Below are positions 318 to 63,985 of a DNA stretch of 64,000 nucleotides, one piece after another. Source of the DNA: Haliotis rubra (Eukaryota); the NCBI RefSeq assembly GCF_003918875.1, contig NW_025767297.1, positions 558,001-622,000 of the forward strand, given 5' to 3'. The notes beneath the pieces were generated by a model, which worked only from the letters and a program-made list of their open reading frames with translations, ran no database searches and was not told the DNA's origin. Position 1 is the stretch's first letter; every line of letters starts with the position of its first letter. The position numbers and the translations under genes were made by a program.

Positions 318-2661
318 TGTGTGTTTGAATACTGCTATATTTTGCGTAATACAACAAACACAAATAGTGTTAGATGTGCCGGAACGGCGATGAATAATTG
401 TATTAGTTTTCACGAGTGTCAATACACGGACGGGTTGGATGCAGCCTAGCACGCATATGGATGTGTTAAATGTATGGGATAATTTGTGCTTGAGATCATA
501 TGTTTCATTACTCCGTGCCAACATTAAATGGATGAAGAAATCGTGTATTTTGTTTCATCGGTTCCTGTTTCAGAAGTAGATCACTGGTACACACTTATAC
601 CCAAAAGGATTATATCACAATGTTCTTTTTTCAGATTCAATGGTTGACAGCGACTTCTCCATTGACGTACTTCATTAAATTCCTTGAACATAAAACTTCC
701 ACGCCAGAGGATAATCCATCTCACCTGCCGAAACAGATTCCATACATGTAGAATGACAAAAATAATGGACTGAAACTGATCACTGAAACTACGTTGACAC
801 CCGGTGTTCAACTTCTTTGAGAAGTTTCAAGAAGTTGAATGGTAGGACAACAAGGGATGAACATCATCTTTATCACCAGGTGTTCGCTTTAACCTTCAGC
901 AAGTCCAGCTCAACCTGTCAACTTATCTTATTTTCACCTTCATTCTACGTGTATTTCATACCTGTTATGTGACAAATTCGACGCCATTCAACAATAATAT
1001 AACTATGACGTCATAACACTGAAACAACGTCAAATGCAGCATTAGCAGAATAAAAAGGAACGTTGAATGAATTCAAAATGTATCAGTAATTTATTATTCA
1101 TATTGCAATGGGACGGTAATATCATTATATTTCCAAAGAAGTATTCATATTCAGACAAAAGTGATGAAGAGCATTGGATATTTTCAACCAATCATATTGC
1201 AAAAAGACATTCTCTGCAAGCCTGATTGGATGTGTCAGTTTTATTTACCGAGATTCCCAATGCTAGTCCATTACCACGACATGTCTCTTATTTAAAACAA
1301 ATATGAACCAACATTCACTTTTTCTACAGAGGTTATTACGTACCTTATGTTGTCAATACCTCTTGTGAAATCTGTTTATTCCGTTGGAAGTCTTATTTAA
1401 AAATCGCCATGATGTCTAAGTTCACCGCCCCGCAAAACTAAAACAAATCATTCTCAATTAACGTCACATCCACTTTCAGTATTTGACCGCACACTGATTT
1501 ACAAAAAAACTAACTAATCCCATTTGTTCCCTCAAAGTCAATAACGCAATGCATTAAAATCACACGGGGGCAACCTAACGGGACTATAATTAAACCTTTC
1601 ATTTGACGTCATTAGACGGTATACCATGCTATGACCTTTACGAAATTTGAGCAACCGACTAGTTGATTGAATTTTGCGTCAAACGTCCCAGGAAGCATGA
1701 AAAAGTACACAATGCAATTCCCATATTCTATATTATTCATAAAGAAATCATATTAGTTATTGTTTATTTGGTAAAACGCTTTTCAGCTGATGAAATCGTT
1801 GAGTTGTTTATCGGTGGATTAAGGCCCTTGACGATTACAGCGGGGAATAAAAGAGATTCTGATTGGTTGAGCCACTCGAGGGACCGTGAGCCGGAGAATA
1901 CATGGGAAGGACGTCCAATAGTGATGAAATACGTGCTCCATCAGTTTCTCTTTGTGGTGATAAAAAGAGATACACCGAGACGACATGGCGCTACTGTGTG
2001 AATATTGTGCAGAGTAGAATTAAATACTGTTAGAGTTTTTCAGATTGTAATGGTGACAGGAGTGGTCCGGAGATCTGAGGCAGCTTACCTAGTTGAGAAG
2101 AGTCGCGCCCCCAGTCGTGGCAGGATCCACTGATAATGGTTTGGAATCCCAAATTCGACCAGAGTGTGATCTGTGGCAGGTCAATATAGTCGCGGTGGGT
2201 TAAACAGTAAGTGAGTACACGTATCGCTGACACCTGATAACGGTGAATCTCACGATGAATCGTGCTATTGAATGTGTTACGGCAGATGTAACGTTGACGA
2301 TAGTGCTGTCGTATATGTAACATGTTTGTGCTTACTTTTTTAAGCTTGCGTTATTTTATTATATTTATTTATTTATTTATTATATATTAATTTATTTAGT
2401 TAATTATTTAATTGTCTATATATTTTATTTACTTTTATGTGTGTGTGTGGGGGGGAGAGTAGTCAATTCCTGACATCAGGGGCATAGTTTGTTTTCGTTG
2501 ATTTAACCTTCAAGTAGTCAATTCCTGCCACAGGTAAATGACGGGGAAATGTATCTATTACGGTGTCTTGCAATCAATCAAATCATGTTATCTGACTTCC
2601 TGATAAAAAGGTCTCTTGCAGCAAGCATTTTGGGTTACTAGTCTTCAATTCTTATCAGACG

Positions 2662-2788
2662 TGGTACTAATCTACTATCCCATGGTACTAATATACTATC
2701 CCATGGTACTAATATACCATCCCATGGTACTAATCTACTATCCCATGGTACTAATATACTATCCGATGGTACTAATATACCATCCCAT
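2662..2788. repeat. 21-bp minisatellite (GGTACTAATATACTATCCCAT, ~6 units) at the Tc1 left end
   Basis: Direct tandem units; they generate the spurious MVLIYYP ORF. Confidence 0.9.
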
Positions 2789-3645
2789 AAAGGAACGCAT
2801 AGGCATTTTGTATTTTTTAAATCTACGAATTCCCTATTGTGTTCAAACAATCGTCAAAATATGTAACAACAGCGTTGATAACATGATTTTACACAATTGC
2901 ACAAGTAAAAAATCGCCTTGACCTGAAAATGTTGATTTTGATGAGATTTCTTACAAAGATTAAAAAGGCATCGCCACAACGCAACAGAAATCACCTTCCA
3001 GTTGAAATTGTGTAGCAAAGAGCATGCACTGTCTGACTATAAAAACAGATTGCTTTCGGAAATTGGCGTTCGTTTTGAAGGAGTTTCAAGGTAAAATCAC
3101 TACGCCACGTCTTGACGCTGCGGCACGGAACATCGCCATTGAAAGAATGCACGATGGTGATTATCAATCTTCTGATGCCAGGCGTCTGAATGTTAGTCTG
3201 AGCAGGATATCACGGCTTGCAGCTCGTTACAACCAAACAGGTATTACAAATAGCCGTCCCCGTACAGGCAGACCTCGAGTCACCACTGCAGCCCAAGATC
3301 GGTACATCCGGGTACTACATTTGCGTGATCGTACTGCCACGGTGAGAGCACAGCAACCAGGGTGCTTGGACTTCGGAGGATATCCGGCCAAACGGTACGG
3401 AGCAGGTTGAGAGAGACTGCACTGAGAGCCAGGATACCCGACGTCGGGACCGTGCTACGTCGTCGCCATCGCGCTCAACATCTCCCTTAACTAAAATTAT
3501 CCACTTGGTTGTACAGACATTTCCTTCTTCTAAACTGATGTATAAAATCTTGCACTAAAGTCTGTTTGTGGACGAGTTATACATGTTTGAAAATACAACA
3601 TTTTCGCAACAGATTTCTGGGTTATGCGTTTCTTTTTTGGAATAG
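2780..3645 (+). mobile_element. Internally deleted Tc1/mariner DNA transposon
   Basis: ORF 3024-3410 has the HTH region and SRPRTGRPRVTTAAQDRYIR linker motif. Imperfect TIRs CCATCCCATAAAGGAACGCATA / TATGCGTTTCTTTTTTGGAATAG flanked by TA. DDE domain absent. Confidence 0.85.
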
Positions 3646-6820: not shown

Positions 6821-7052
6821 ACTGGTTTTGTAAAATAACTAACTTGGATAAGGATATCAGACTTAGACAGAGTATGCCCCCAAGTCGACCAGACCTTTTC
6901 TTAACCCTGTATAGCCGAGAGACAGGTAAGGAAACAACAAGTACGATATTTGATCGAACCTGGAGCAAATAATCCAGTGATCAACAGTATGAGCATCGAT
7001 CTAGGCAACTGGGATGCATACACTTTATACAGACATTTGATTAAAGTGAACA

Positions 7053-7290
7053 AACCCGTGAAGATCCGGGTTAGAATTCATCTACAGTAACCCATGCTTG
7101 TCGTGAGAGGCAACTAACGGGATCGTGTGGTCAGGTTCGCTGAATTGGTTGACACATGTCATCGTATCCCAATTGCGTAGATCGATGCTCATGCTGTTGA
7201 TCACTGGGTTGTCTTTTCCAGATTCGATTTTTTACCGACCGCTGCCATGGAATATTGCTGGGTGCGGTGTAAAACTAAACTCGCTCACTC
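7053..7290 (+). mobile_element. SINE family B, full length
   Basis: Starts ACCCGTGAAGATCCGGGTTAG, ends AAAACTAAACTCGCTCACTC; 13-bp TSD ATTAAAGTGAACA at 7040-7052 and 7291-7303. Confidence 0.9.
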
Positions 7291-8575
7291 ATTAAAGTGA
7301 ACATCAATTGTGAAATGAACAGTAATCTTCGTCGGATTTTATTTTCTGTTGTTGTTTAAATACTTTCTATGGAAATAGTGGTTATTGCCGTTACCCCATG
7401 TCATGGTACGTTTACCTTCTTCGACGTTACTTATTGATAGTGTAGAATTCTGCAGCGTTCTTCATCAACTCGATTGACTTCATCATGGGCAATAAAGACA
7501 ACTTACTTCACATTAGGAATTACTAATTATTTGTCCCCCATGAATAAATGGGGTATGCGTCTCGCAAAGTATCATGAAGCGATGCATTATTTGACACGGA
7601 AGATATAATCCTTTCTTAAGCACTATCGTTATTGTCTGAACGTTACCATGGTGATTGGTTTATGGATTCCATAACAAACCCAGAAAGCATCCAACAGTCA
7701 TCATATGATAGTATCTCCATCTTCAGGTCATTACTGGAATCGTTTCAAGGACGCCTAATAGGGGTAAATACCACGTATTAGAACGTCACAACATCTCTTA
7801 TTAACGTTACAAGTCACCTACAATCGCATAGTTTCGTGAATAATTGAATCTATCGTTTATAATTGAATCCAATAGGGCATTAAATGAAGCAACAATTGAC
7901 TACATCCGTAAACAACAAGATTTATGGCCATGGTTCCTTTGATCGATGCTCAGTATATAAACGGTGCTTTGTGAATAAGACAATTGGTTTGAAACTGGTA
8001 GCAGTCTATCCCGTTGTGAGATGCGTGAATGGTTTCCACCAGTCTGACAGGAGCGTGGTTTATTCGCCTGTAACAAGCGGAGGCTTTGAAAAGCGATCTC
8101 GTTTTGGTTATCGATTCGTTTACATAGATCCTTCTCTATAAACATTCGAAAAGATTTCTGATAGTGTGTGACTTTTCAGAGGTCAAGAAGCGGTCAAACG
8201 TGGCTTGTTTACTTGCCAGCTATGGCAGCGGGTTCTTTCTTTATGTATTTCTGATTCAAAACGTTGTGCAGTCCTGAAGAATGGTGGTCGAATACTTACA
8301 TGTTTATACATGGTTATTGCCCATCTGTGCGGTATGTGCATAGGAGTGTTTAACATAAGAAGTACACCCTTTACTGCAATAGGGTGGTGATTATATTATT
8401 TACATTTAAGAAATGTTTACGTCCAGTGGCAGCAAATGTCTTTGACATTTGCATTGATGTATGATACATTGATGGGCGTCCAATTTATAGATCTGTACAA
8501 ACAGTTTTAAATGTACACGTGGCTGCATGCTGGTCAACGTAGGTTCAGGGAGTTATATTACATGGATGTAGGATA

Positions 8576-11414: not shown

Positions 11415-11635
11415 TGCTTGTTTGTTGTTTAACGGTACACTCAGCAATATCCCAGATACATGTCGACGATATGTAAATAATAGAGTCTGGACCAGACAAT
11501 CCAGTGATCAACATCGATCTACTCAACTGGGATTCGATGACATGTATCAGCGAGCCTGACCACCCGATCCCGTTAGTCGCCTCTTACCACAAGCATTGGT
11601 TACTGAAGACCAACTGTAACCAGGATCTTCACAAG
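11415..11635 (-). mobile_element. SINE family B
   Basis: Reverse complement of the family B body and head. Confidence 0.8.
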
Positions 11636-11736
11636 TGTCCAATAATATGAGTCGTTTCAACAGTATTGGGTTTTCCTTCGTCATTCGATCTCTAACGTAC
11701 CTTTTGATTGGTTAATGTTTACAGTAACATTGAGCG

Positions 11737-18945: not shown

Positions 18946-18990
18946 TTTCAATCCCTACTAAATTGATATACATGTGTTCTGTGTTCTAGT

Positions 18991-19152
18991 ACCCGTGAAG
19001 ATCAGGGTTAGAATTGATCTTCAGTAACCCATGCTTGTCGTAAGAGGCGACTAACGGGATCGGGTGGTCAGGCTCGCTGACTTGGTTGACACATGTCATC
19101 GAATCCCAGTTGAGTAGATCGATGTTGATCACTGGATTGTCTGGTCCAGACT
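18991..19152 (+). mobile_element. SINE family B, 3'-truncated
   Basis: ACCCGTGAAGATCAGGGTTAGAATTGATCTTCAGTAACCC...GTCGTAAGAGGCGACTAACGGG. Confidence 0.88.
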
Positions 19153-20851
19153 GCATTTGTAGGTACCTCGATGTGAACGTCAGCTTGTCAGAGGGACGGA
19201 GGGAGCGGATAAAACATTCCCACAGTGTCTTGCCGTTATTGTTACTAACAAACTTCTAACATACCAGATACAGGAATCTACGTTTAATCTAACCGACCGT
19301 CATTCCCTTGATATGCTGGTGATACAAATTAGTTCCACTTCACGTAGTCTGAAATACCACACAGTAATGGTAGTTTCTAAATTCCTTGGCTTCAGGTTAC
19401 AGTGAAAAAGAGCTGTTGAGAAATGCTGTTGACACGTAGGGGGAGATCTACAATATTTATTTCCCAAATTGAACTCGGTTCGTGTTTGTGTGGATTAAAG
19501 GCCCTGTAATTGGGTGGCCGCTGATCACAGTAAGCATTGCATATACAACATACGCATGCCAATTTAAAAGCTACGTTTTGGCGTTTTCGTTCTTTAAGAA
19601 AATAGGAATTATTAAAATCCACATGGCGTGAGATAGATTAATTTCTTAAAGTCATATCATATTAATAAGAATCATGTGTAAAATGAATGTAATGCTAATA
19701 CAAAAGTGCTTCAGGTTACACTCTTTGAGCTAGAAATAGACGAAAAATCACCCAACAAAAGAATCTTCAAATTATTGATCCATTAGTTATTTCCTGAGGC
19801 ATAAAATCCCAGAAATGTGAGCGAGTTTGCAATCTACATGTTTCCTTTGGTTATCATAATAAAGCAAATATTTATTCCCTTCCTACCTCCAAGTGGATGG
19901 CATTACAGATTGGATTAATAAATATCTTTTATATCGCACACGCCTCCCCTAAGCGCAGATCAATTCCTACCCTCGGCGGGGAGAGGTTATTTCAAGGGGA
20001 TCAAAAGGTCAAAGATATTTTCTGAAAGGTCAAATCGGGGAATTTCTGATTCGAGGCAATCTAACGATTTTAAGCCTTTTATTCCATCAATACACTCAGG
20101 CAAGTATAAAGCCACCTAGATTTAAGCATTTCTCAATTAAAATTGTTTCAGTTTGTTTCAAAGAAAGAATGTTGGTATTTGTGATATGATATCTGCCCAT
20201 CTACATTTGGTAAGTAGAGTACAATTGAGTAGGGATTCAATCTATGTTTAGCATAACTTATTATCACCAAGTCCCCGAAACAAGCACATTGTCCACAAGG
20301 CCACCGAGTGCACCTATTGACCCTTCACCCCAAGTTAAATTTCACACGCCAAGGTCAAGGCTGTTGCACCCTGCACATGGAATGACAAATGCTTATCTAT
20401 TGAACCAAAAATTTTAACTATTTTGTATATTTTACAAATTTAAAGATATGGAGTCGTTACCACAGACATTCTTTAAAATATTGATTTTCCTTATATATTT
20501 TTTTCTGTATTATTTTAGCTCTGAATTTTGAAGTATTTTATTAAAACTGATAAAAATTATCTGACACTGTGATCGCCTAAATATACAAATTTCGTCATAT
20601 ACAGTTCAGAATGGTAAACATCATTATGTATTTATTTATCTAAACAATCATAAATATATAATAAGTAAGTGAGAGTGAGAGCAACGTTTCGGTGTAGTTC
20701 TCCTTGAACAATATTCCAGTTACATGCACCATCTGGTGCTGGAACCTACCCCGCCGCTCTCACTGCAGTAAGGTTCTTCATCCATAGATTGTTATCCTTC
20801 CTCGACAACTCGTGAATGTGTCCATGTAATTGAAATCACCATACTTACAGG

Positions 20852-26714: not shown

Positions 26715-26905
26715 TGTTTGTTTGTTGTTTAACGCCGCACTCAGCAATGTGCCAGCTATATGGAGGCAGTCTGTAAATAATCGAGTCTGGACTAGACAAT
26801 ACAGTGAGCAACAGCATGATTGGGATATGATGTCAAGTCAGCGAGCCTGATCACCTAATCCCATGGATTGCTGAAGACCAATTATAACCCTGATCTTCAC
26901 GGGTA
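26715..26905 (-). mobile_element. SINE family B, deleted copy
   Basis: Ends GATCTTCACGGGT; flanking repeat CTTGAGC. Confidence 0.8.
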
Positions 26906-26924
26906 CTTGAGCGAGTAAAGTGGT

Positions 26925-27060
26925 TGAGTCCCATCGGGTTAGGCGGCTAACTTTGTGTGCTGGCGATTAGGTGCCTAATCTGAGGGTGTGGGTTCGAATC
27001 CTCAACCGAACAAAAGTACTAGAATCTGTACTTTACTGAGAAACTGTAATCCCAAATATA
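26925..27060 (+). mobile_element. tRNA-derived SINE family C
   Basis: B box GGTTCGAATCC and tail AGAATCTGTACTTTACTGAGAAA..GTAATCCC, shared with 38930-39160. Confidence 0.6.
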
Positions 27061-27218
27061 ACATATGTTACAATGACATTGAATCGATATTGCAAACTGA
27101 GGCACTAAAATCCGTCACACCTCCGTAGCAGGCTGTAGAAATAGGGAAGACATAAGTGTCAATATTCCTCAGCAGAACGGACGGAAAATACGTAGGTCAG
27201 AGAATGGAAACCAACCAT

Positions 27219-29229: not shown

Positions 29230-31395
29230 AATGATGAATCATACATGATTATGTTGAGCAGCAAATGTAATAATGAGTTAGATATGGTTGTGTTCAGCAG
29301 CACTTGTTATGTTAAGTCCGATATGGTTGTGTTCAGCAGCACTTGTTATGTTAAGTCCGATATGGTTGTGCTAAGCAGCACTTGTTATGTTAAGTCCGAT
29401 ATGGTTGTGCTAAGCAGCACTTGTTATGTTAAGTCCGATATGGTTGTGCTAAGTAGCACTTAAGCACTAATCTCGTGTCAGATATGATTTAATAAATGTG
29501 CTAAGCAGCACTTGGAAATGTTGTTAAGTAATATTAGGTTGCAATGATAAGCAGCACATGTTAAAGTCACATATAATGATGTTAAGAAGCACATGTCATG
29601 TGGGTCCGATATATAGGTTGTGTTAAGCAGCACTTATGTGTTAAGTAGCACGATATGATATTGTGTTGTTGTTATGTTAAGTCCGATAGATATTATGTTG
29701 AGCAGCACATGTAATGTTGTGTCATAGATATTATGTTGAGTAGCACATGCAATGTTGTGTCATGATATTATGTTAAGCACCGATAGCACATGTAATGTTG
29801 TGTCATAGATATTATGTTGTAGCAACATGCAATGTTGTATCATAGATATTATGTAAGCAGCACTTGTTATGTTAAGTCCGATAAATATTGTGTTAAGTAG
29901 CACATGTAATGTTAAGTGTCATAGATATTATGCTAGTAGCACATGCAATGTTGTGTCATAGATATTATGTTAAGTAGCACATGTTGTGGAGTCATGATAT
30001 TAATGTTGTGTCATAGATATTATGTTAAGTAGCACATGTAATGTTGTGTCATAGATATTATGTTGAGTAGCACATGCAATGTTGTAGTCATAGATATTAT
30101 GTTAAGTAGCACATGTAATGTTGTGTCATAGATATTATGTTGAGTAGCACATGCAATGTTGTGTCATAGATATTATGTTGAGTAGCACATGTAATGTTGT
30201 GTCATAGATATTATGTGAGTAGCACATGTAATGTTGTGTCATAGATATTATGTTAAGTAGCACATGCAATGTTGTGTCATAGATATTATGTTGAGTAGCA
30301 CATGTAATGTTGTGTCATAGATATTATGTTGAGTAGCACATGTAATGTTGTGTCATAGATATTATGTTGAGTAGCACATGTAATGTTGTGTCATAGATAT
30401 TATGTTGTTGTAGCACATGTATTGTGTTGAGTAGCATATGTAATGTTGTGTCATAGATATTATGTAAGTAGCACATGTAATGTTGTGTCATAGATATTAT
30501 GTTGAGTAGCACATGTAATGTTGTGTCATAGATATTATGTTGAGTAGCACATGTAAATGTAATATAATTGTTGAGTACGCCACATCAGCAAATCCCAGTT
30601 ATGTCATGGCGGCGGTATGTTAAATAGCACATGTAATGTTGTGTCATAGATATTATGTTAGCAAGTAAGTTGTGTCATAGATAATGTTGAACATGTCATA
30701 GATATTATGTGAGTAGCACATGTAATGTTGTGTCATAGATATTATGTTGAGTAGCACATGCAATGTTGTGTCATAGATATTATGTTAAGTAGCACATGCA
30801 ATGTTGTGTCATAGTATTATGTTAAGTAGCACATACAATGTTGTGTCATAGATATTATGTTAAGTAGCACATGTAATGTTGTGTCATAGATATTATGTTA
30901 AGTAGCACATGTAATGTTGTGTCATAGATATTATGTTGAGTAGCACATGTAATGTTGTGTCATAGATATTATGTTAAGTAGCACATGTAATGTTGTGTCA
31001 TAGATATTGTGTTTAGTAGCACATGTAATGTTGTAACATACATATTATGTTGAGTGACACATGTTGTGTCATAATATAATTGTGAGTGAGTCAGTGAGTT
31101 TAGTTTTACGCCACACTCAGCAATATCCCAGCTATATGGCGGCGGTCTGTAAATAATCGAGTCTGGACCAGACAATCCAGTGATCAACAGCATGAGCATG
31201 TTATTATGTTGAATAGCACATGTAATGTTGTGTCATAGATATTATGTTGTCGTTATGTTGTAAAATAATATGTATGTCACAACATTATATATGTAATGTG
31301 CTACTTAGCATAATATGTATGACACAACATTACATGTGCTACTCAACATAATATGTATGACACAACATTACATGTGCTACTCAACATAATGCGTA
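29230..31395. repeat. 39/38-bp minisatellite array with a terminal inverted block
   Basis: 39-bp GATATGGTTGTGTTCAGCAGCACTTGTTATGTTAAGTCC grades into 38-bp ATAGATATTATGTTGAGTAGCACATGTAATGTTGTGTC; units reverse-complemented after ~31265. Confidence 0.92.
31082..31200 (-). mobile_element. SINE family B 3' half inserted in the minisatellite
   Basis: Tail and body match family B. Confidence 0.85.
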
Positions 31396-33019: not shown

Positions 33020-33254
33020 TGCTTGGTTGTTTAACCAGCACTAAGCAGTATTCCAGCTATATGGCGGCGGTCTGTAAATAATCGGGCCTGGACCAGACAA
33101 TCCAGTGATCAACAGCATGAGCATCGATGTACGCAATTGGGATACGATGACATGCGTCAACCAAGTCAGTGAGTCTGACCACCCGATCCTGTTAGTCGCC
33201 TCTTACGACAAGCATGGGTTGCTGAAGATCAGTTCTAACCCGGGTCTTCGCAGG
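33020..33254 (-). mobile_element. SINE family B, near full length
   Basis: Reverse-complement match to family B. Confidence 0.88.
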
Positions 33255-33270
33255 TAGAACTATAACCAAT

Positions 33271-41679: not shown

Positions 41680-41938
41680 GTGAGTGAGTGATTGAGTTTA
41701 GTTTTACGCCGCACTCAGCAATATCCCAGCTATATGGCGGCGGTCTGTAAATAATCGAGTCTGGACCAGACAATCCAGTGATCAACAGCATGAGCATCGA
41801 TCTGCGCAATTGGGAACCGACGACATGTGTCAACCAAGTCAGCGAGTCTGACCACCGATCTCGTTCGTCGCCTCTTACGACAAGCATAGTCGCACATGGG
41901 TTGCTGAAGACCTATTCTACCCCGGATCTTCACGGGTC
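41680..41938 (-). mobile_element. SINE family B, full length
   Basis: 14-bp TSD CCATGCGCCTGTGA at 41666-41679 and 41939-41952. Confidence 0.92.
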
Positions 41939-43512: not shown

Positions 43513-43720
43513 ACCCGTGAAGATCCGGGTTAGAATTGGTCTTCAGTAACCGAAAGAGGCGACTAACGGGATCGGGTGGTCAGTCTCGCTGACTTGGTAT
43601 CCCAGTTGCGTAGATGGATGCTCATGCTGTTGATCACTGAATTTTCTGGTCCAGAATCGATTATTTACAGACCGCCGCCATATAGGTGGAATATTGCTGA
43701 GCGCGGCGTTAAACAAAGAA
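43513..43720 (+). mobile_element. SINE family B with internal deletions
   Basis: ACCCGTGAAGATCCGGGTTAGAATTGGTCTTCAG start. Confidence 0.85.
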
Positions 43721-51677: not shown

Positions 51678-51837
51678 GGGGCGGTGGGGTAGCCTAGTGG
51701 TTAAAGCGTCCACTCGTCACGCTGAAGACCCGGGTTCGAATCCCCACATGGGTACTATGTGTGAAGCCCATTTCAGGTGTCCCCCGCCGTGATGTTGCTG
51801 GAATATTGCTAAAAGCGACGTAAAACTAAACTCAGTC
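51678..51837 (+). mobile_element. SINE family A present only in duplication copy 1
   Basis: Absent at the paralogous site near 57508. Confidence 0.9.
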
Positions 51838-51997
51838 AACACATTCCCGCAACACATTCTCTTGATAAGCATCGGGTACTTGCAAGTAAATGTGTTGGTT
51901 ATGTTGTGAACTGTGCAAATGCTAAATCTCTGGAACTTCGGTGTGACCAGCGAACTCGTTAACCACAAGGCTACTCCACCACCTCTTATATATTAAC

Positions 51998-52225
51998 ACC
52001 CGTGAAGATCCGGGTTAGAAATGATCTTCAGTAACCAATGCTTGTCGTAAGAGGCGACTAACGGGATCTGGTGGTCAGGCTAGCTGACTTGTTTGACACA
52101 TGTCAGCGGTTCCCAATTGCGTAGATCGATGCTCATGCTGTTGATCACTGGATTGTCTGGCGCAGAGTCGATTATTGACAGAACGCCGCCATACATGTGG
52201 AATACTGCTGAGTGCCACACTCACT
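51998..52225 (+). mobile_element. SINE family B shared by both duplication copies
   Basis: Paralog at 57681-57910. Confidence 0.88.
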
Positions 52226-55200: not shown

Positions 55201-57680
55201 AAACATGCTTCAGATACCTTTCAGGACAGACGCTGGAGGTACCCTTGCATTCCCTGTCCTCTTTTGGCCCATTCTGATTACACGTACTTAGCAAAAACAA
55301 GCAACATTATCCAACACTGGAGACAAGCCAGGAAAGTGTAACCGATCACGGATTTTCTGAAGATAACATTTTGTAGTTAGTGCATATATCTTTAACCAAT
55401 GGTCATTCTGATACTGATGTTAAATTGGAATATAGCTATATGTACCCAAATACACATGATACCATGTGTTTGTGGTGGAAGCTATATCTACCAATTTACA
55501 CATGATACCAATTGTGTGTGGCGGAAGCTATATATGTACCCATTTACACGTGATGGCATGTGCCGCATGTCCAATTATTCATATCAGATGTGTATTTTTC
55601 ATGAATTGAACCAAGAGTAAAATATGCAATCAGGCTGTCAAGGCCATGCAACTTGCAAACGATAGTGTTGAGTGATATGCTTGCTTCACTTAGTGGGGAC
55701 AGGAACAAACAGTCTCAAGTGCCAGACTTCCTGTAGAAATCTCTCGAATAGTTTCCGCTGTTCAAACTCCTACTTTCGGTGAAGTTATCGGCTTGATTGC
55801 CTCATTAACGTGATGTTGTCTCGTGACAGGTAATGAAACCTCCCATACTGCAGCATGTGTCAACACTTCCACAGTCAAGTGAACTTGGCATTATGTGTCA
55901 ATAGTTTCATAGAAACATGTAGTGCAGCACGTACCAACACCTTCTTCGTGGCATGACACTTTCTTAGTCTGCAAGTATCAACATAGTATGACACTGATGA
56001 CTTGCAGCACGTTTTAACAGGTTCATAGTCACGTGCCAACATCTTCATCCACACGTGTCAAGAAGCACGTGTCAACAGTTTCTTATTCTACACTTGTCAA
56101 CAGTTTCATAATCACGACATGCAGCACCCGTCAAGACGTCATGAGACACCTGACATGCAGAACGACCCAACAATTCCATAATCACATGACATGCAGCACG
56201 TGTCCACATCTTCTTCTACAAATGCCGTGAAGCACATGTCAACATTGTCGTCGTCTCGTGACCAGTAGAACATGTCCACAGTTTCTCAGTCACATGACTT
56301 GTAACATTCATCAACAGGTGTTCATTTCAGCATTAATTGGGTATCTACTAAGGACATAATTCAAACAGGACAAATGGTTCACCATATTATTTCATATTTT
56401 GCAGGACGTAACCCTTATAATAACCATGCTGACTTTGTAATTTCTTTGAGTGGTTTTTCTGAAGTTGGGAAGTTCGACACTGACACATTTATGGATAACA
56501 ACTTCATTCATTTTGTGAGTGCGACGCTTCCTTCCAGATTCTTGTACTGCTGTCTTGTCATGTATGCACTCAGCAATTCTTATCCATAAATGTGTCAGTA
56601 GTGTTGACCTTCCTCCAGTAATTCAGATGAAAACACGTGTTAACGTGTCAACTTTTAACAGAATGCTCCAATGCTCTTTTTCTCTGAGAGTTTATTCCCG
56701 ATCTGAAGACACATGTGTCCCATCTCACGCTTTTTACAAAGAATTCATTCTATGATGTGTTCATGTTACTCATCATTTGACTAAGTTGAACGATGACAAC
56801 GACGACGACGCCGATGAAGATGATGATGATGAGTAGGAGGATGAGGAGTGTTAAAATGATTGCTTTCCCATGCTCCATACAACCATATCTTTTTCGATAA
56901 TGAGACTTTGCATGTTTACACTTCCAGCTCAAGGAATATTGCCTGATGATTGAGGCTGTATTTATGCTGTGTAACCTTAATAGAAAAGATGAATTTCATC
57001 CACGGTGATGAAGTACTTTTAACCAACTGTGACTGCATCTTTAATCCCCAAATAGTTTCATATTGCATCCTCACAAATGCCACTTTTGAAATTAGCTTTT
57101 GCCAGATCAAACATACGAAAATAGTACGTGTATTTTTCGTCTTAAATGCGTGTTTCATATTTTCTGGCAAGGGAAATGAATCAAATCGACAGGACGTCCG
57201 TCAAAACATGATCGTGAAAAACAAAGTTGGAATGTCACCATATTATGACCACGTGGAACTAATTTTGATCAAATTAAAGTGATATAACCAATTGATAAAT
57301 GGATTCTTCAATCCAACTTGTACGTTTGGGCTCTCCAGTAACCCCTCTCTAATACCTCCAAAAATAAAAGGTAATCCTGCTCAAGTGTAAAGTTCTTTGG
57401 AAGCTCTGAAACCCTGCATTATTCAGAGATCCATTTGGATTTTGGTGGGGGATATACATAACAGATAATATTTGAGACTAAGTGTTAGTCAAGTGATCTA
57501 TTATTAAAGAGGATGGGCCACAACACATTGTAAGATCTGGGTAGGAATCGGATACTTGCAAGTCAAGGTGCTGGTTATGTCATGAACTGCACAAATGCTA
57601 AATCTCTTGGAATCAGGTCTTAGGCGTGACCAGAGAAGGCGTTAGTCTCAAGGCTACTCCACCGCCCCTTTTCTATAAAG

Positions 57681-57910
57681 ACCCGTGAAGATCCGGGGTA
57701 GAATTGATCTTCAGTAACACATGCTTGTCGTAAGAGGCGACTAACGGGATCTAGTGGTCAGGCTTGCTGACTTGGTTGACACATGTGATCGGTTCTCAAT
57801 TGCGTAGATCGATGTTCATGCTGTTAATCACTGGATTGGACTCGATTATTTACAGACCGCAGCCATACAGCTGGAATATTGCTGAGTGCGGCGTAAGACT
57901 AAACTCACTT
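57681..57910 (+). mobile_element. SINE family B
   Basis: ACCCGTGAAGATCCGGGGTAGAATTGATCTTCAG...AAACTCAC. Confidence 0.88.
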
Positions 57911-59200
57911 TCCCACTTATTTATTAACTCGTGCTGATACTACGTGTGCAAGGAAAAGACACTGTTTCACTGCTGTCCTTATCCATCCTGGCGATATCCT
58001 ACGATCCAGTGTTGATAAAAATGACATGATCTATTGATCTGTTCGATCAGCTGTCATGGTGGCACAAAGAGTCAACTTCCTCCAGTGCAATCCAATAAAG
58101 GAATATTTATCATGGTCATTTCACGAAACGATTCAATCATCCAATCATTGGTAAAGATATTATCTTTTTATGATGCCTTAAATAATGCAGTTGGTCGTTA
58201 TTTGGAACATGCGTCTGAAACAGCGTATTATACTCAGTATCATGTTATAATGCCTAGGTAGTATTTCATTATCATGTTCTTGCCAACATCAATACAGTTT
58301 CACAATAAATATTTCCGTAATAGAAGCTTGAGATAACAAATTACGGTGTTTCTGATTGATTCCCTATGGTCTAACCCCAGAGCCCGATAACAAGAGCTCT
58401 GTACGCAAAATGGACATTGGCTTGAAGGACTGTTTATCTACAGAAAGTCCAACGCATGATTCCATAATAATTTGGACTAAGATAACACGGAAGACGTCAA
58501 AACGTTAAGACAGGACATGCTTTAAAAAGATAAACATGACATAAAGAGAAGGAACAGAATGATGAACATTCATATAGTTTCAATAATTGTTTTGAAACTA
58601 ATCAAATATTTGTTAGGTCTTTATGTTACTACGGTCAATAAAAGCTGAAGGATTTGTATATGTTGATTGCTTTTGCTTGTCGTGTGAACCAATAACGGTA
58701 CATGGATTCGGGGATAACATTCCTTTCGTATCTCTGCATCTCTCAAGGTCTTACTGGTAACGGTTCCAGGCACTTAAATGCATATATCGCACGTGTTGGG
58801 TGTTTGTTTGTAGCACGTGCATGACTGATGAGCAGATATATCAACTAGGTACGTATGCTGCCAATTATCTCTACAGACATGTCACTACTGAGGAAGGCTA
58901 CACCTAACAGCATCTTCCTGGTTGCTGTTGTAAACATTTCCATCTTCATCCTACAAAAATATCCCCGCTGTACGTTAGGTGCATTTGTACGTTCCGTGCT
59001 ACTTGGGCAAGATTCACAATATGGAATCCAAAGCTTATTTTGCATGTCGGTATAAACACTGGGTGATGAAAATATTGTATGTGTGTTTGTATGTACAGGG
59101 ATTGTATCGCATAAACATATTCTCTGTTATTAACTGGCATTAGTCCTGACTAGTTGAAACAGACAGACAGAAACAGACACACACACAAACACAGTCTCAA

Positions 59201-61865: not shown

Positions 61866-62689
61866 ATGGTACTGATAGTGCGTGAGTGGACAACGTGGTA
61901 TGACAAGAGGATATGCACCAAATGTTTGCTGACGAAAGTATTAGCAGACAAACTAGACAGAGTTTCGAGGCACTCTCGACACATATTCAAACAATTAGGT
62001 ACTTTGAATAAATTAAGTTTCAAAGAAGTATATCTGCACCCTAACAAAATAGATGTAATTTCCCTCCATTTAATTACGCAAAGGGGTTTATCGCGCTTAG
62101 TGGTATGGAATGTGCAGAGGATCACTACCGCAAGTACGTTTGAGTAATACACATAATATAACAATGAATTGGTTGAGATAATCATTACCAAGTCAGTAAT
62201 ATCATGGTCGTTAATCTGAATCTTGAACAACACGTCTGGTTGTAGTTCACCGGCCCAAATTGATGGTGTCGATACATTGTGTACTTATAACATATGATGT
62301 CGAAACCTCACTTATGCTTTAAACATACCTCCCCGGTTTGCAGGATATTGAGTTTCGCTTATCACACACAAAAACAGCAAAGTTAATCTTTTGTCAAGAT
62401 TTAGTACTTACAACTGTTTTGTACTGTTTCGAAATTGCAAAACGTCAGTCATAAAGACCTGTATTGTATCATATATGATAGCAAAACCCACCCCGTCTTT
62501 ATTTATTTATGACTTCCATTATGCATTCCTATTCACTATTTGTCAACTGTGTACACACTTTTCCCTGCCTCCTCTCTTCCTCATACTGACAGTTTCCTTG
62601 TTTCCCGCTTCATTCTCTTGACTGAAACGCTCAACATGTATTTGTTCACTTCGACAGATGCCCTGATATAAAGTGTTTGCAGTTATTCC

Positions 62690-62860
62690 GGTATGTAAAT
62701 AATTGAGTTTGGAGAAGCGATTCCTGTGACTGACATCATGAGCATCAATCTTCTCATTCGGGATACGAAGACATGTATCAACCAAGTCACCGAGCTTGAC
62801 CACCCGATCCCTTTAGTCGCCAAACATTGGTTGTTGAACACCAATTCCCTCCCGGATATT
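62690..62860 (-). mobile_element. SINE family B, degenerate
   Basis: CAACCAAGTCA..GACCACCCGATCCC..TTAGTCGC. Confidence 0.7.
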
Positions 62861-63636
62861 CGGGGGATTCCTTTACAATTGCATTTATGCTGGTGCTTTT
62901 GTAATGTCGACTTGACTTGGTGTGCACCTCTATTTTTAGGACCGATATAATGTGTCTTACCACTTCCATCCATCGACTTCACTTTCCGACTCCAATTTCT
63001 CAAACTCATCCTCCTTCAAAGAAAAGATTTTTTCCCCAACCTGGAAAAATCGATAGAGTATTTTACAGAATCATGCATGGAATGTTACTACCGCAAATGG
63101 CTGCTGTTTCATTGATGATGCTTGATGTCATATCTAGCATTGACGTCATATTCATGACGCCATAAAATATTTTTAACCTCTGGTATTTTTTAGTTTCTTG
63201 GCAAAGAAATACTTCCATGACAACTCAATGAGATAGCTTCGAAAATGTACTGCTTGCAGCATTGATGTTTTTACTGAAACCTTTAATTTTGGTACATAAA
63301 AGGACGCTAAATGAGTAGAAGGGAGAGAAAGGGTGTAATATAAAATTTATTTCATCCGAGTATTTTTGCCTTGGAAATAAAAGCGACAAAACCATTTCCA
63401 CATCCATAAGAAATATCTGCTAAAAGCGGAGCCACGGGCTTGTGTCTATAAATCAATACCTAAATAGTGATACCAGATTTCTATATTTAAAGCCATTGTA
63501 GCGCCATACTGAGTCTTACCCAATAGCTACACATGTCTAAATAGGTAGTAGTTTCAATTAGTGCAAGCAGCCCCGTACAAACACATATATGTTGCTATGT
63601 TCAATCATCTTAAACGTGACGCCAAACAGGTAAAAG

Positions 63637-63985
63637 ACCCGTGAAGATCCGGGTAAGAATTGGTCTTCAGCAACTCAAGCTTGTCGTAAGAGGTGACTAA
63701 CGGGATCGGGTGGTCAGGCTCGCTGACTTGGCTGATGCATGTCATCATATCCCAGTTGCATTGATCGATGTTCATGATGTCAATCACTGGATTATCTGGT
63801 CAAGACTCGATTATTTACAAACCGCAATATAGCTTGAATATTAAATCTTTGAAGGGCGTTTAGACGTGGAATGCATAAGAAAACCAAGATTTATGGATGT
63901 CAACTTCTTTATTTTGAACAACACGACGTTTCGGAGTGTATGCTTACTCCTTCATCAGGTAACATTAAGCTTGAATATTGCCGGG
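63637..63985 (+). mobile_element. SINE family B interrupted by a Penelope-like fragment
   Basis: Head at 63637; tail split, with AGCTTGAATATT duplicated on both sides of the insert. Confidence 0.85.
63920..63962 (-). ncRNA. Minimal type-I hammerhead ribozyme motif (Penelope-like terminal repeat)
   Basis: Minus strand CUGAUGA-A-GGAGU(aagcauac)ACUCC-GAAACGUC; palindromic ACGU in place of stem III; AAUAAA downstream; stem I only 2-3 bp. Confidence 0.7.

What the first reader, a model, noticed from the sequence alone, without database searches (positions are those of the whole stretch)
18991..19062. SINE family B starts with a fixed, pseudoknot-capable RNA head: candidate structured or self-cleaving RNA
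Seen: at least 8 copies (7053, 18991, 26905-, 41938-, 43513, 51998, 57681, 63637) start within 1-2 nt of ACCCGTGAAGATC. TSDs at 7040/7291 and 41666/41939 pin that 5' end, and no Pol III A box is visible. The first ~70 nt can fold as follows: CCCG pairs with distal CGGG; hairpin UGAAGAUC/GRUCUUCA (the A/G variants keep U-A or U-G, and copy 18991 extends it by an A-U pair); loop GGGUUA pairs with downstream UAACCC as a pseudoknot; hairpin GUCG/CGAC is followed by UAA and the closing strand. Established: HDV-like and twister ribozymes define the 5' ends of R2, RTE and L1Tc retroelements, and a C-U-A-A joiner before the closing helix recalls HDV J4/2. Inference: the head may be a self-processing RNA that does not fit the HDV, pistol or twister consensus exactly. 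Alternative: GAAGATCCGGGTTAGA matches family A's tRNA T-arm region GAAGACCCGGGTTCGA at 14/16 positions, so it could be a clipped tRNA head.
Basis: partly seen in the sequence, partly recalled or inferred. Interest (0 to 1): 0.8.

Follow-up and report, generated by a model that had tools for sequence, protein, structure and literature searches.

The report
LINE-type folded head of abalone SINE
This is the first ~70 bases of a very abundant, already described kind of abalone short jumping element whose head is not a tRNA but a folded RNA module also found at the start of LINE jumping genes; one of its hairpins is clearly kept by evolution, but nothing I could test shows that it cuts itself.

Summary
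The window has 8 exact ACCCGTGAAGATC starts, and 12 head-bearing copies by covariance model. The genome has at least 42,000 copies. All begin at the same base, with target-site duplications and unrelated upstream flanks.

The element fits the 'LP-SINE' described in Haliotis in 2016 (PMC4758252): a tRNA-less SINE whose ~70-nt head matches LINE 5' UTRs. I confirmed the LINE link. An RTE-type LINE on a metagenome contig carries the module upstream of its ORF (45.8 bits, E 3e-10).

The long hairpin UGAAGAUC/GAUCUUCA is under selection. One pair passes A-U, G.U, G-C across subfamilies of thousands of copies. In the LINE all 8 pairs are kept, 3 changed on both sides.

The other helices get no such support. 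Two of the six proposed pseudoknot pairs are broken in a subfamily of thousands.

Self-cleavage is not supported. Rfam gives no ribozyme hit at E<=10. The helix order is not HDV-like and no catalytic C is in place. A G-biased extra base at the 5' junction suggests a capped, initiated RNA. A low-copy abalone LINE has a separate HDV-like ribozyme upstream of a weakly similar module.

The scan noted this family before on other DNA of this genome. Ordinary, apart from the fold evidence.

The parts
18991..19058 (+). Head module (element nt 1-68) of this SINE copy, from A1 to the CGGG strand.
   Evidence: R1 covariance model 112.6 bits. The same limits appear in old and young consensus folds. Homologous module in an RTE-type LINE, L120:125-204.
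18996..19003 (+). 5' strand of the long hairpin H2 (UGAAGAUC).
   Evidence: Pairs with 19016-19023. Pair 11-28 covaries A-U / G.U / G-C genome-wide. All 8 pairs are kept in LINE L120, with 3 double changes.
19016..19023 (+). 3' strand of the long hairpin H2 (GAUCUUCA).
   Evidence: As above. In the count of structure pairs only this helix shows covariation among SINE subfamilies.
18992..18995 (+). CCCG, 5' strand of the proposed closing helix H1. It is also complementary to the start of the H2 loop.
   Evidence: Invariant among SINE subfamilies. In L120 this pairing loses one pair, while the alternative 5' pentamer to loop pairing stays perfect (read). Unresolved.
19055..19058 (+). CGGG, 3' strand of the proposed closing helix H1.
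   Evidence: Minimum-energy fold. No informative variation.
19005..19010 (+). Loop GGGUUA, the proposed pseudoknot 5' strand.
   Evidence: Only the GGG part is constant. U18G in the young subfamily breaks pair 18-37.
19025..19030 (+). UAACCC, the proposed pseudoknot 3' strand.
   Evidence: U35C in subfamily S2c and the young subfamily breaks pair 20-35. The CCC run is kept in L120 and L119 without covariation.
19037..19051 (+). Hairpin H4, GUCG-UAAGAGG-CGAC. It is part of the 21-nt core GUCGUAAGAGGCGACUAACGG.
   Evidence: Invariant in all SINE subfamilies. The exact 21-mer recurs in two unrelated metagenome elements, one of them a LINE.
18991..19152 (+). This SINE copy: element nt 1-171, with the 3' part missing or rearranged.
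   Evidence: BLAST to the family consensus, 92% over 171 nt.
7054..7291 (+). Full-length copy flanked by a 13-nt target-site duplication.
11427..11636 (-). Decayed copy.
26727..26904 (-). Copy with internal deletions.
31083..31199 (-). 5'-truncated copy (element nt 132-248).
33030..33255 (-). Copy whose head starts ACCTGCGAAGACC.
41681..41937 (-). Young-subfamily copy with a 14-nt target-site duplication and one extra G.
43513..43717 (+). Copy with deletions.
51998..52215 (+). Copy inside a duplicated segment.
57681..57921 (+). Copy inside the same duplicated segment.
62689..62867 (-). Old, diverged copy.
63637..63842 (+). Copy.

Best explanation
The stretch is the head of an 'LP-type' SINE: a ~250-265-nt non-autonomous retroposon of abalone with at least 42,000 copies. 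It has no tRNA-derived head. It starts with a ~68-nt module of the kind found in 5' UTRs of LINEs, and it ends in a LINE-type tail with (ACTC)n or (CAAA)n repeats.

Shown here: the RNA's first templated base is A1. Copies are inserted by target-primed reverse transcription, as seen from target-site duplications, 5' truncations and template-jump junctions. The module occurs in an RTE-type LINE. Its long hairpin is maintained by compensatory substitutions, and the tolerated G.U states point to the sense-strand RNA as the folding strand.

Inferred: the module is a portable 5' leader that marks the start of the transcript and is needed as folded RNA for the element to be copied. Likely roles are an internal start signal for a capped transcript, and/or a structure that stabilises the RNA or makes it acceptable to the LINE machinery. 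It most likely does not cut itself.
For: Fixed 5' end:
- The top 40 genome hits start at element nt 1-4.
- 200 listed upstream flanks are unrelated.
- Target-site duplications of 10-16 nt end 0 or 1 nt before A1.

Copy number:
- 17,770 exact matches of a 23-nt head pattern.
- 41,994 heads with an intact hairpin context.

Known kind:
- PMC4758252 section 10 describes TSD-flanked SINEs in Haliotis whose first ~70 bp match the 5' ends of Nimb and RTE LINEs, with the hexamer ACTAAA before the 3' tandem repeats.
- This family has ...GTAAAACTAAACTCACTCA.

LINE link tested here:
- L120 has the module at 125-204 (R1 45.8 bits, E 3e-10, model built from abalone SINE heads only).
- It is followed by a 987-aa ORF with APE and RT domains.

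Hairpin selection:
- Pair 11-28 counts are A-U 28,109, G.U 7,422, G-C 5,112 and A.C 1,351 (odds ratio about 14).
- G.U and G-C are the defining states of large subfamilies. A.C has no subfamily of its own.
- L120 keeps all 8 pairs, with 3 changed on both sides.
- A8 count: 6 of 8 pairs changed on both sides, 0 of 500 shuffles as high.

Against self-cleavage:
- Searches give no ribozyme family.
- The single extra base at the 5' junction is G in about 22 of 27 young copies and in 3 of 5 S5 copies that have one.
- A low-copy abalone RTE-like LINE has its own HDV-like fold at its first base, upstream of a module-like stretch.
Against: - I could not compare the head with the published Hdi_LP, Nimb-17_LMi, I-3_DR or RTE-9_CPB sequences, because figures and supplements are not held. 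Identity with the 2016 family is inferred from its description.
- Promoter activity, a cap, and the polymerase are all untested.
- The extra G could be templated in the young master copy, since S5 copies often have no extra base.
- The L120 and L119 hits were found with a 21-mer from the head. Conservation of that core is therefore partly ascertainment, and the source organisms are unknown.
- Four protein relatives of the L120 LINE lack the module.
- The abalone LINE module match is weak (7.6-8.1 bits, E 0.6-0.8).
- The abundant partner LINE reported by earlier notes was not found by me.
- An inverted DNA repeat bound by a dimeric factor would also give symmetric changes.
Confidence: 0.7

Rival explanations
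1. The head is a new class of self-cleaving ribozyme. It frees the SINE RNA from read-through transcripts at A1.
For: - The 5' end is precise and there is no recognisable Pol III promoter.
- It is a conserved, folded module with an ultra-conserved 21-nt core and a covarying stem.
- LINE 5' ends are a known home of ribozymes (PMC4758252 section 10; PMC3383444 abstract).
Against: - No Rfam ribozyme family matches at E<=10.
- The helix order is not HDV-like, and no C sits in the J4/2-equivalent position.
- A 22-nt insertion and 4 substitutions lie inside the head of the most prolific recent subfamily.
- Two pseudoknot pairs are broken there.
- The G-biased extra base at the junction fits a cap better than a 5'-OH end.
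- In a low-copy abalone LINE, a separate HDV-like fold defines the 5' end upstream of a module-like stretch.
Confidence: 0.05
2. The head is a clipped tRNA head. It would derive from the variable-loop and T-arm part of the tRNA-derived SINE family A, and would be transcribed by Pol III through the remaining B-box-like motif.
For: - Element nt 7-22 match family A at 14/16, or 15/16 against the common GAAGATCC variant. Score z=3.8, with 1 of 500 shuffles as good.
- The two families share the 3' tail at 54/63 positions, so they coexist and could recombine.
- There is no TTTT run in the consensus.
Against: - The motif GGTTAGAATTG has A at the conserved C56 position in all subfamilies. It becomes GGGTAGAATAG in the most recent, very successful subfamily.
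- There is no A box, and no tRNA model hit.
- No longer copies with a tRNA 5' half exist: among GAAGATCCGGG sites not preceded by the SINE start, the tRNA-type ones are ordinary family A copies.
- In LINE L120 this stretch is the variable stem of the module.
Confidence: 0.1
3. The inverted repeat acts only as double-stranded DNA, as a palindromic binding site of an internal promoter. The RNA fold would be a by-product.
For: - The 2016 authors proposed a promoter role.
- Symmetric changes in both half-sites are expected for a dimeric binding site.
- The transcript starts at a fixed base a few nt upstream of the repeat.
Against: - The asymmetric states that became large subfamilies are exactly those that give G.U in the sense RNA: G11.U28 with 7,422 copies, and U12.G27 in about half of the A-U class. 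The equivalent A.C state never defines a subfamily.
- In L120 three further pairs are G.U.
- The half-site sequence is not conserved between SINE and LINE, whereas the pairing is.
Confidence: 0.12
4. The head is a small tRNA-like three-way junction. A host enzyme such as RNase P would cut it out of longer transcripts at A1.
For: - The 5' strand pairs with a 3' strand that directly follows a 4-bp/7-nt-loop hairpin, an arrangement resembling an acceptor stem and T arm.
- There is sequence similarity to a T arm.
Against: - No tRNA-like score from Rfam or ARAGORN.
- The closing helix is only 4-5 bp and is not supported in L120.
- The G-biased extra base argues for a capped end.
Confidence: 0.03

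Closest known systems
LP-SINEs ('LINE promoter' SINEs) of gastropods and bivalves, including Haliotis diversicolor and H. midae (Matetovici et al. 2016, PMC4758252)
   Same: - Abalone host.
- TSD-flanked, tRNA-less SINE.
- A head of about 70 nt shared with LINE 5' UTRs.
- 3' terminal tandem repeats preceded by ACTAAA.
- A tail shared with other SINEs.
   Different: Nothing tested here differs. The paper proposes a promoter and gives no fold. Here one hairpin is shown to covary, and an RTE-type LINE with the module was found independently. I could not align to the published sequences.
Pr77 / L1TcRz of trypanosome L1Tc and NARTc (PMC3383444)
   Same: A ~77-nt 5' module shared by an autonomous LINE and its short non-autonomous partner, and sitting at the exact 5' end.
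   Different: Pr77 is both a promoter and an HDV-like ribozyme. The abalone head matches no HDV-like model and lacks the HDV helix order and catalytic C.
HDV-like ribozymes at the 5' ends of R2, RTE and other LINEs
   Same: Location at a retroelement 5' end. A nested, pseudoknot-capable fold has been proposed for the head.
   Different: Topology, P1.1, the J4/2 cytosine and covariance-model tests are all not met by the SINE head. A true HDV-like fold is present at the first base of a low-copy abalone RTE-like LINE (L134:767-835), upstream of a module-like stretch.
tRNA-derived SINE family A of the same genome
   Same: The same 3' tail (54/63 positions) and the same kind of repeats, so probably the same LINE partner. 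A 14/16 match to its T-arm region.
   Different: Family A has a full tRNA-like head with an A box (TAGCCTAGTGG) and a B box (GGTTCGATTCC). Family B has neither.

Membership tests
LP-SINE (Matetovici 2016) | Short non-autonomous element with variable-size target-site duplications and 3' terminal tandem repeats. | tested here: met
   Target-site duplications of 7-16 nt. (ACTC)n or (CAAA)n tails. 5'-truncated copies.
LP-SINE (Matetovici 2016) | Head of about 70 nt that is not derived from a small cellular RNA. | tested here: met
   No Rfam family at E<=10 and no ARAGORN tRNA on the heads. The module limits are nt 1-68.
LP-SINE (Matetovici 2016) | Head homologous to the 5' part of a LINE 5' UTR. 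| tested here: met
   L120 has the module 306 nt upstream of a 987-aa APE+RT ORF. R1 45.8 bits, E 3e-10.
LP-SINE (Matetovici 2016) | Sequence identity with the published Hdi_LP/Hmi_LP consensus and with Nimb-17_LMi, I-3_DR and RTE-9_CPB. | not testable with these tools
   Figures and supplements are not held. Sequence strings are not found in the paper library.
HDV-like ribozyme | Nested double pseudoknot with strand order P1-P2-P3-P3'-P1'-P4-P4'-P2', with the cleavage site at the first base of P1. | tested here: not met
A forced mapping (P1 2-8/62-68, P3 47-50/58-61, P2 35-39/94-98, P4 77-91) needs a G.A mismatch and conflicts with the covarying hairpin (consensus).
HDV-like ribozyme | Catalytic cytosine at the start of J4/2. 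| tested here: not met
   In the forced mapping, J4/2 is U92-U93 with no C (consensus).
HDV-like ribozyme | Match to the HDV-type covariance models. | tested here: not met
   No hit at E<=10 on two copies. RF00094 on the whole genome gives only one match, at E 9.65 and elsewhere. Caveat: the manually mapped HDV-like fold of L134 is also missed by Rfam, so this test is weak for minimal variants.
Hammerhead, twister, twister-sister, pistol, hatchet, hairpin, VS, hovlinc ribozymes | Match to the family covariance model. | tested here: not met
   cmscan of all 4227 Rfam families at E<=10 on window 18960-19260 and L025:1470-1800.
tRNA-derived SINE | Internal A box and B box, and a tRNA-like 5' region. 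| tested here: not met
   No A box. The B-box-like motif matches 6 of 9 specified positions in the old consensus and 5 of 9 in the young one. No tRNA model hit.
Self-cleaving RNA in general | Site-specific cleavage of the transcript, leaving 5'-OH and 2',3'-cyclic phosphate ends. | not testable with these tools
   All public runs that hold the element are kept as contigs, which cannot show RNA ends.

The most novel reading that the evidence does not exclude
The ~68-nt module would be a portable 5'-end-forming or 5'-end-protecting RNA of a class not yet described, either self-cleaving or processed by a host enzyme. It has an ultra-conserved 21-nt core and a free-to-vary stem. RTE, Nimb and I LINEs of several phyla would carry it, and SINEs would copy it to do without a Pol III promoter.
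Probability: 0.06. Interest if true: 0.85.

Novelty: already known. Interest (0 to 1): 0.3.

Why it matters
SINEs are defined as Pol III elements with heads from small cellular RNAs. LP-SINEs are the exception, and how they get a defined 5' end is still untested.

This family has more than 40,000 copies in a 1.4-Gb genome, so whatever the head does works very well. Two results move the open question from 'promoter DNA' towards 'functional leader RNA'. First, the long hairpin is kept by compensatory changes, with G.U intermediates. Second, the same module sits in an RTE-type LINE. Together they give concrete mutants to test.

They do not make the element new, and they give no support to a new ribozyme.

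Tried and rejected
1. Search for the abundant abalone LINE that earlier notes say carries a ribozyme plus this module. I did not find it.
- I tried APE, RNase H and Exo_endo_phos family searches.
- I mapped the 5' end of the commonest I-type LINE. It starts TCCATTCATTCA at L061:~602, with no module.
- I fetched 3.5 kb upstream of RNase H in five copies, from groups that looked different in the RNase H search. At least one of them (L068) proved related to the family already mapped.
- I fetched upstream regions of a second APE group.
- I ran pattern searches with exclusion codes around the head and around the tail.
- All of these returned SINE copies, tRNA-SINE family A, truncated copies, or decayed relatives. 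Examples are L070:2862-2938 and the C762 1.75-kb tandem repeat.

2. A recurrent context at C391/C103 is a 5'-truncated SINE inside a segmental duplication.

3. 3' ends of six RNase H LINEs show no match to the SINE tail.

4. Rfam HDV model on the whole genome: nothing useful.

5. Two viral-contig scans with head motifs: 0 hits.

6. Reads: all 23 runs are contigs. Read laying shows the family in four coded organisms, but no RNA starts.

7. Thermodynamic significance: z only -0.3 to -1.9 for the SINE heads. z is +0.4 and -0.1 for L120 and L119. Energy alone does not support the fold.

8. A C4-G66 to U-A change in copy 33255 is explained by decay of two CpGs, so it does not count as covariation.

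9. Four protein relatives of the L120 LINE (55-59% identity) lack the module.

10. A pattern built from the L3 region of the abalone HDV-like fold found no larger family.

Full report
**What is there**

The finding's stretch, window 18991-19062, is the start of one copy of an interspersed repeat. The 13-mer ACCCGTGAAGATC occurs 8 times exactly in the window, against 0.99 expected, and 0 of 100 shuffles reach that number. I built a covariance model (R1) from 19 heads. It finds 12 heads in the window. BLAST with the family consensus gives the limits of 12 copies, one of them 5'-truncated. Copies 51998 and 57681 sit in a larger duplicated segment.

The genome is 1.38 Gb in 2855 contigs. In it, a 23-nt degenerate head pattern has 17,770 exact matches and none in the reversed control. 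Heads with an intact hairpin context number 41,994.

**The 5' end**

- The 40 best genome hits all begin at element nt 1-4.
- The 57 heads I held, and 200 further listed upstream contexts, have unrelated flanks. There is therefore no longer precursor, no tRNA 5' half and no conserved leader in front of A1.
- Target-site duplications of 7-16 nt end 0 or 1 nt before A1.
- In the young subfamily about 27 of 30 copies have one extra base, and it is G in 22.
- In subfamily S5, 6 clear cases have none and 5 have one: G, G, G, C, T (read by eye).
- Several loci show a partial head (nt 1 to about 50-59) joined directly to A1 of a full element. This is what a template jump at the RNA's 5' end would give.

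A1 is therefore the first templated base. The G-biased untemplated base is what reverse transcription of a capped RNA is known to give in other LINE systems (my knowledge). It could also be a templated G in the young master copy.

**What kind of element**

The consensus is about 250 nt. It ends ...GCGGCGTAAAACTAAAC followed by (TCAC)n. A second tail type ends in (CAAA)n. The last ~63 nt are 54/63 identical to the tail of the tRNA-derived SINE family A of the same genome.

Matetovici et al. 2016 (PMC4758252, section 10) describe TSD-flanked 'LP-SINEs' in Haliotis diversicolor and H. midae, Littorina, Ostrea and Saccostrea. Their first ~70 bp are homologous to the 5' ends of Nimb-17_LMi, I-3_DR and RTE-9_CPB, with ACTAAA or AATATA before the terminal repeats. 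They propose a promoter role, and they mention the L1Tc Pr77 promoter/ribozyme as an analogy. The family here fits that description. I could not align to their sequences.

**Independent test of the LINE link**

One scan of metagenome contigs with the 21-mer GTCGTAAGAGGCGACTAACGG gave two contigs.

- L120 matches R1 over the whole module at 125-204 (45.8 bits, E 3e-10). It is followed by a 987-aa ORF (510-3473) with APE and RT domains and no RNase H, which makes it an RTE-type LINE. Its protein relatives include hemipteran insect sequences at 40-49% identity.
- L119 matches at 35.7 bits and has no ORF of 80 aa or more.
- Four relatives of the L120 protein (55-59% identity) lack the module. This fits the sporadic, modular distribution reported in 2016.

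**The fold**

The minimum-energy fold of the old and the young consensus is a junction closed by CCCGU/ACGGG. It contains the long hairpin H2 (UGAAGAUC/GAUCUUCA) and H4 (GUCG/CGAC). The 22-nt duplication of the young subfamily forms an extra arm. The z-scores are only -1.4 to -1.9.

Evidence from variation, for H2:

- Pair 11-28 has A-U in 28,109 heads, G.U in 7,422, G-C in 5,112 and A.C in 1,351.
- G.U is the state of the large subfamily S3 (loop GAATATTGATC).
- G-C is the state of S5 (GAATGAACC) and S4 (GAATATTGGCC).
- The A.C class has no loop type of its own.
- U12 pairs with A27 or G27 in roughly equal shares of the A-U class.
- In L120 the hairpin reads UCCAGGUU/GGCCUGGG. All 8 pairs are kept, 3 changed on both sides and 3 turned into G.U.
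- On subfamily representatives only H2 shows covariation.
- On the model-fitted alignment that includes L120 and L119, 6 of 8 H2 pairs change on both sides, and no shuffle reaches the observed score. This alignment leans towards the model and holds one spurious row.

G.U tolerance, together with the absence of A.C states, points to the sense RNA as the folding strand.

Evidence for the other helices:

- H1 and H4 never vary among SINE subfamilies.
- In L120, H1 loses one pair (CCCC/CGGG). The 5' pentamer is perfectly complementary to the start of the H2 loop in both elements (ACCCG/CGGGU in the SINE, GCCCC/GGGGC in L120). The partner of the 5' end is therefore unresolved (read).
- The proposed pseudoknot GGGUUA/UAACCC loses pairs 18-37 and 20-35 in the young subfamily, which is about a fifth of the A-U class. 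Pair 20-35 is also lost in S2c.
- Only GGG/CCC is constant, also in L120, without covariation.
- Between the old and young consensus there are 4 substitutions and the insertion in nt 18-40, but only 3 substitutions in the other ~205 nt.

**Is it a ribozyme?**

No Rfam family, ribozyme or otherwise, matches the head at E<=10 in two copies. A forced HDV-like mapping has no cytosine in J4/2 and clashes with the covarying hairpin.

A protein search with the L120 APE region led to three copies of a low-copy abalone RTE-like LINE. The most intact copy begins, at its first base, with a fold that has the HDV hallmarks by manual mapping (L134:767-835):

- P1 GUCUCCU/GGGAGAU, with a G1.U wobble.
- L3 UCCUCGU.
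- P1.1 CC/GG.
- P2 AGCCC/GGGCU.
- CAAC before P2'.

Rfam does not detect this fold. After a 22-nt linker comes a stretch that R1 aligns to the SINE head, in sense orientation just before the ORF, with hairpins at the H2 and H4 positions. The score is weak (7.6-8.1 bits, E 0.6-0.8).

If that homology is real, then in a LINE the 5' end is made by a separate ribozyme and the module has another job. Earlier notes of this scan report the same arrangement for a more abundant LINE. I could not find that LINE.

**The tRNA alternative**

Element nt 7-22 match the family A variable-loop and T-arm stretch at 14/16 (z 3.8, 1 of 500 shuffles). Sites with GAAGATCCGGG not preceded by the SINE start are mostly ordinary family A copies with a complete tRNA-like head.

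The B-box-like motif has A at the C56 position in all subfamilies and degrades further in the young one. This stretch is also the variable stem and loop of the module in L120. I take the match as possible shared ancestry or exchange between co-resident SINEs, not as a working Pol III promoter.

**Verdict**

- The element is an already described kind.
- The head is a real, partly selected RNA fold shared with LINEs.
- Self-cleavage is unsupported but not excluded.

The scan had already noted this family on other pieces of the same genome.

Noticed in passing
L134:767-835 (G000:C203:137666-137734); also L132 and L133: A low-copy RTE-like LINE (3 copies) starts at its first base with a fold that has the HDV-like hallmarks: a 7-bp P1 with G1.U, L3 UCCUCGU, P1.1, P2 and CAAC before P2'. 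Rfam does not detect it. Two of the three copies have lost both P2 strands by deletion.
   Followed up: partly
L075 (G000:C762:24350-26520): A 1.75-kb unit is repeated in tandem at least four times and contains an old SINE B relative. Its body hairpin reads GUCCA/UGGAC where the family has GUCAG/CUGAC, so two pairs are changed on both sides. The SINE body is therefore structurally constrained too.
   Followed up: partly
G000:C449:171337-176388 and G000:C2126:258666-266053: In two contigs, a second endonuclease domain of another LINE group lies about 1.5 kb downstream of the RNase H domain of the common I-type LINE, on the same strand. This could be a recurrent tail-to-head arrangement or a nested insertion.
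   Followed up: no
Several loci, e.g. G000:C424:269162-269249, G000:C446:1610456-1610543, G000:C3:411443-411522: A partial head (nt 1 to about 50-59) is joined directly to A1 of a complete element, in independent loci. This is as expected from reverse-transcriptase template jumps at the RNA 5' end.
   Followed up: no
Window 26904-27200 (-), 51700-51997 and 57380-57680: Three head copies abut, within about 10 nt, the 5' end of an oppositely oriented tRNA-derived SINE. Two of the three are the same duplicated segment.
   Followed up: partly
L061:602 (G000:C52:233856): The commonest I-type LINE (ORF1, APE, RT and RNase H, with many copies at 74-98% identity) starts with TCCATTCATTCA. This is an initiator-like start, with no ribozyme and no module.
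   Followed up: partly
G000:C141:73845-74860: A short-period tandem array of head-like hairpin units (GTGAAGATCTAGTTTAGAACTGGCCTTCAG), spaced about 52 and 104-155 nt apart.
   Followed up: no
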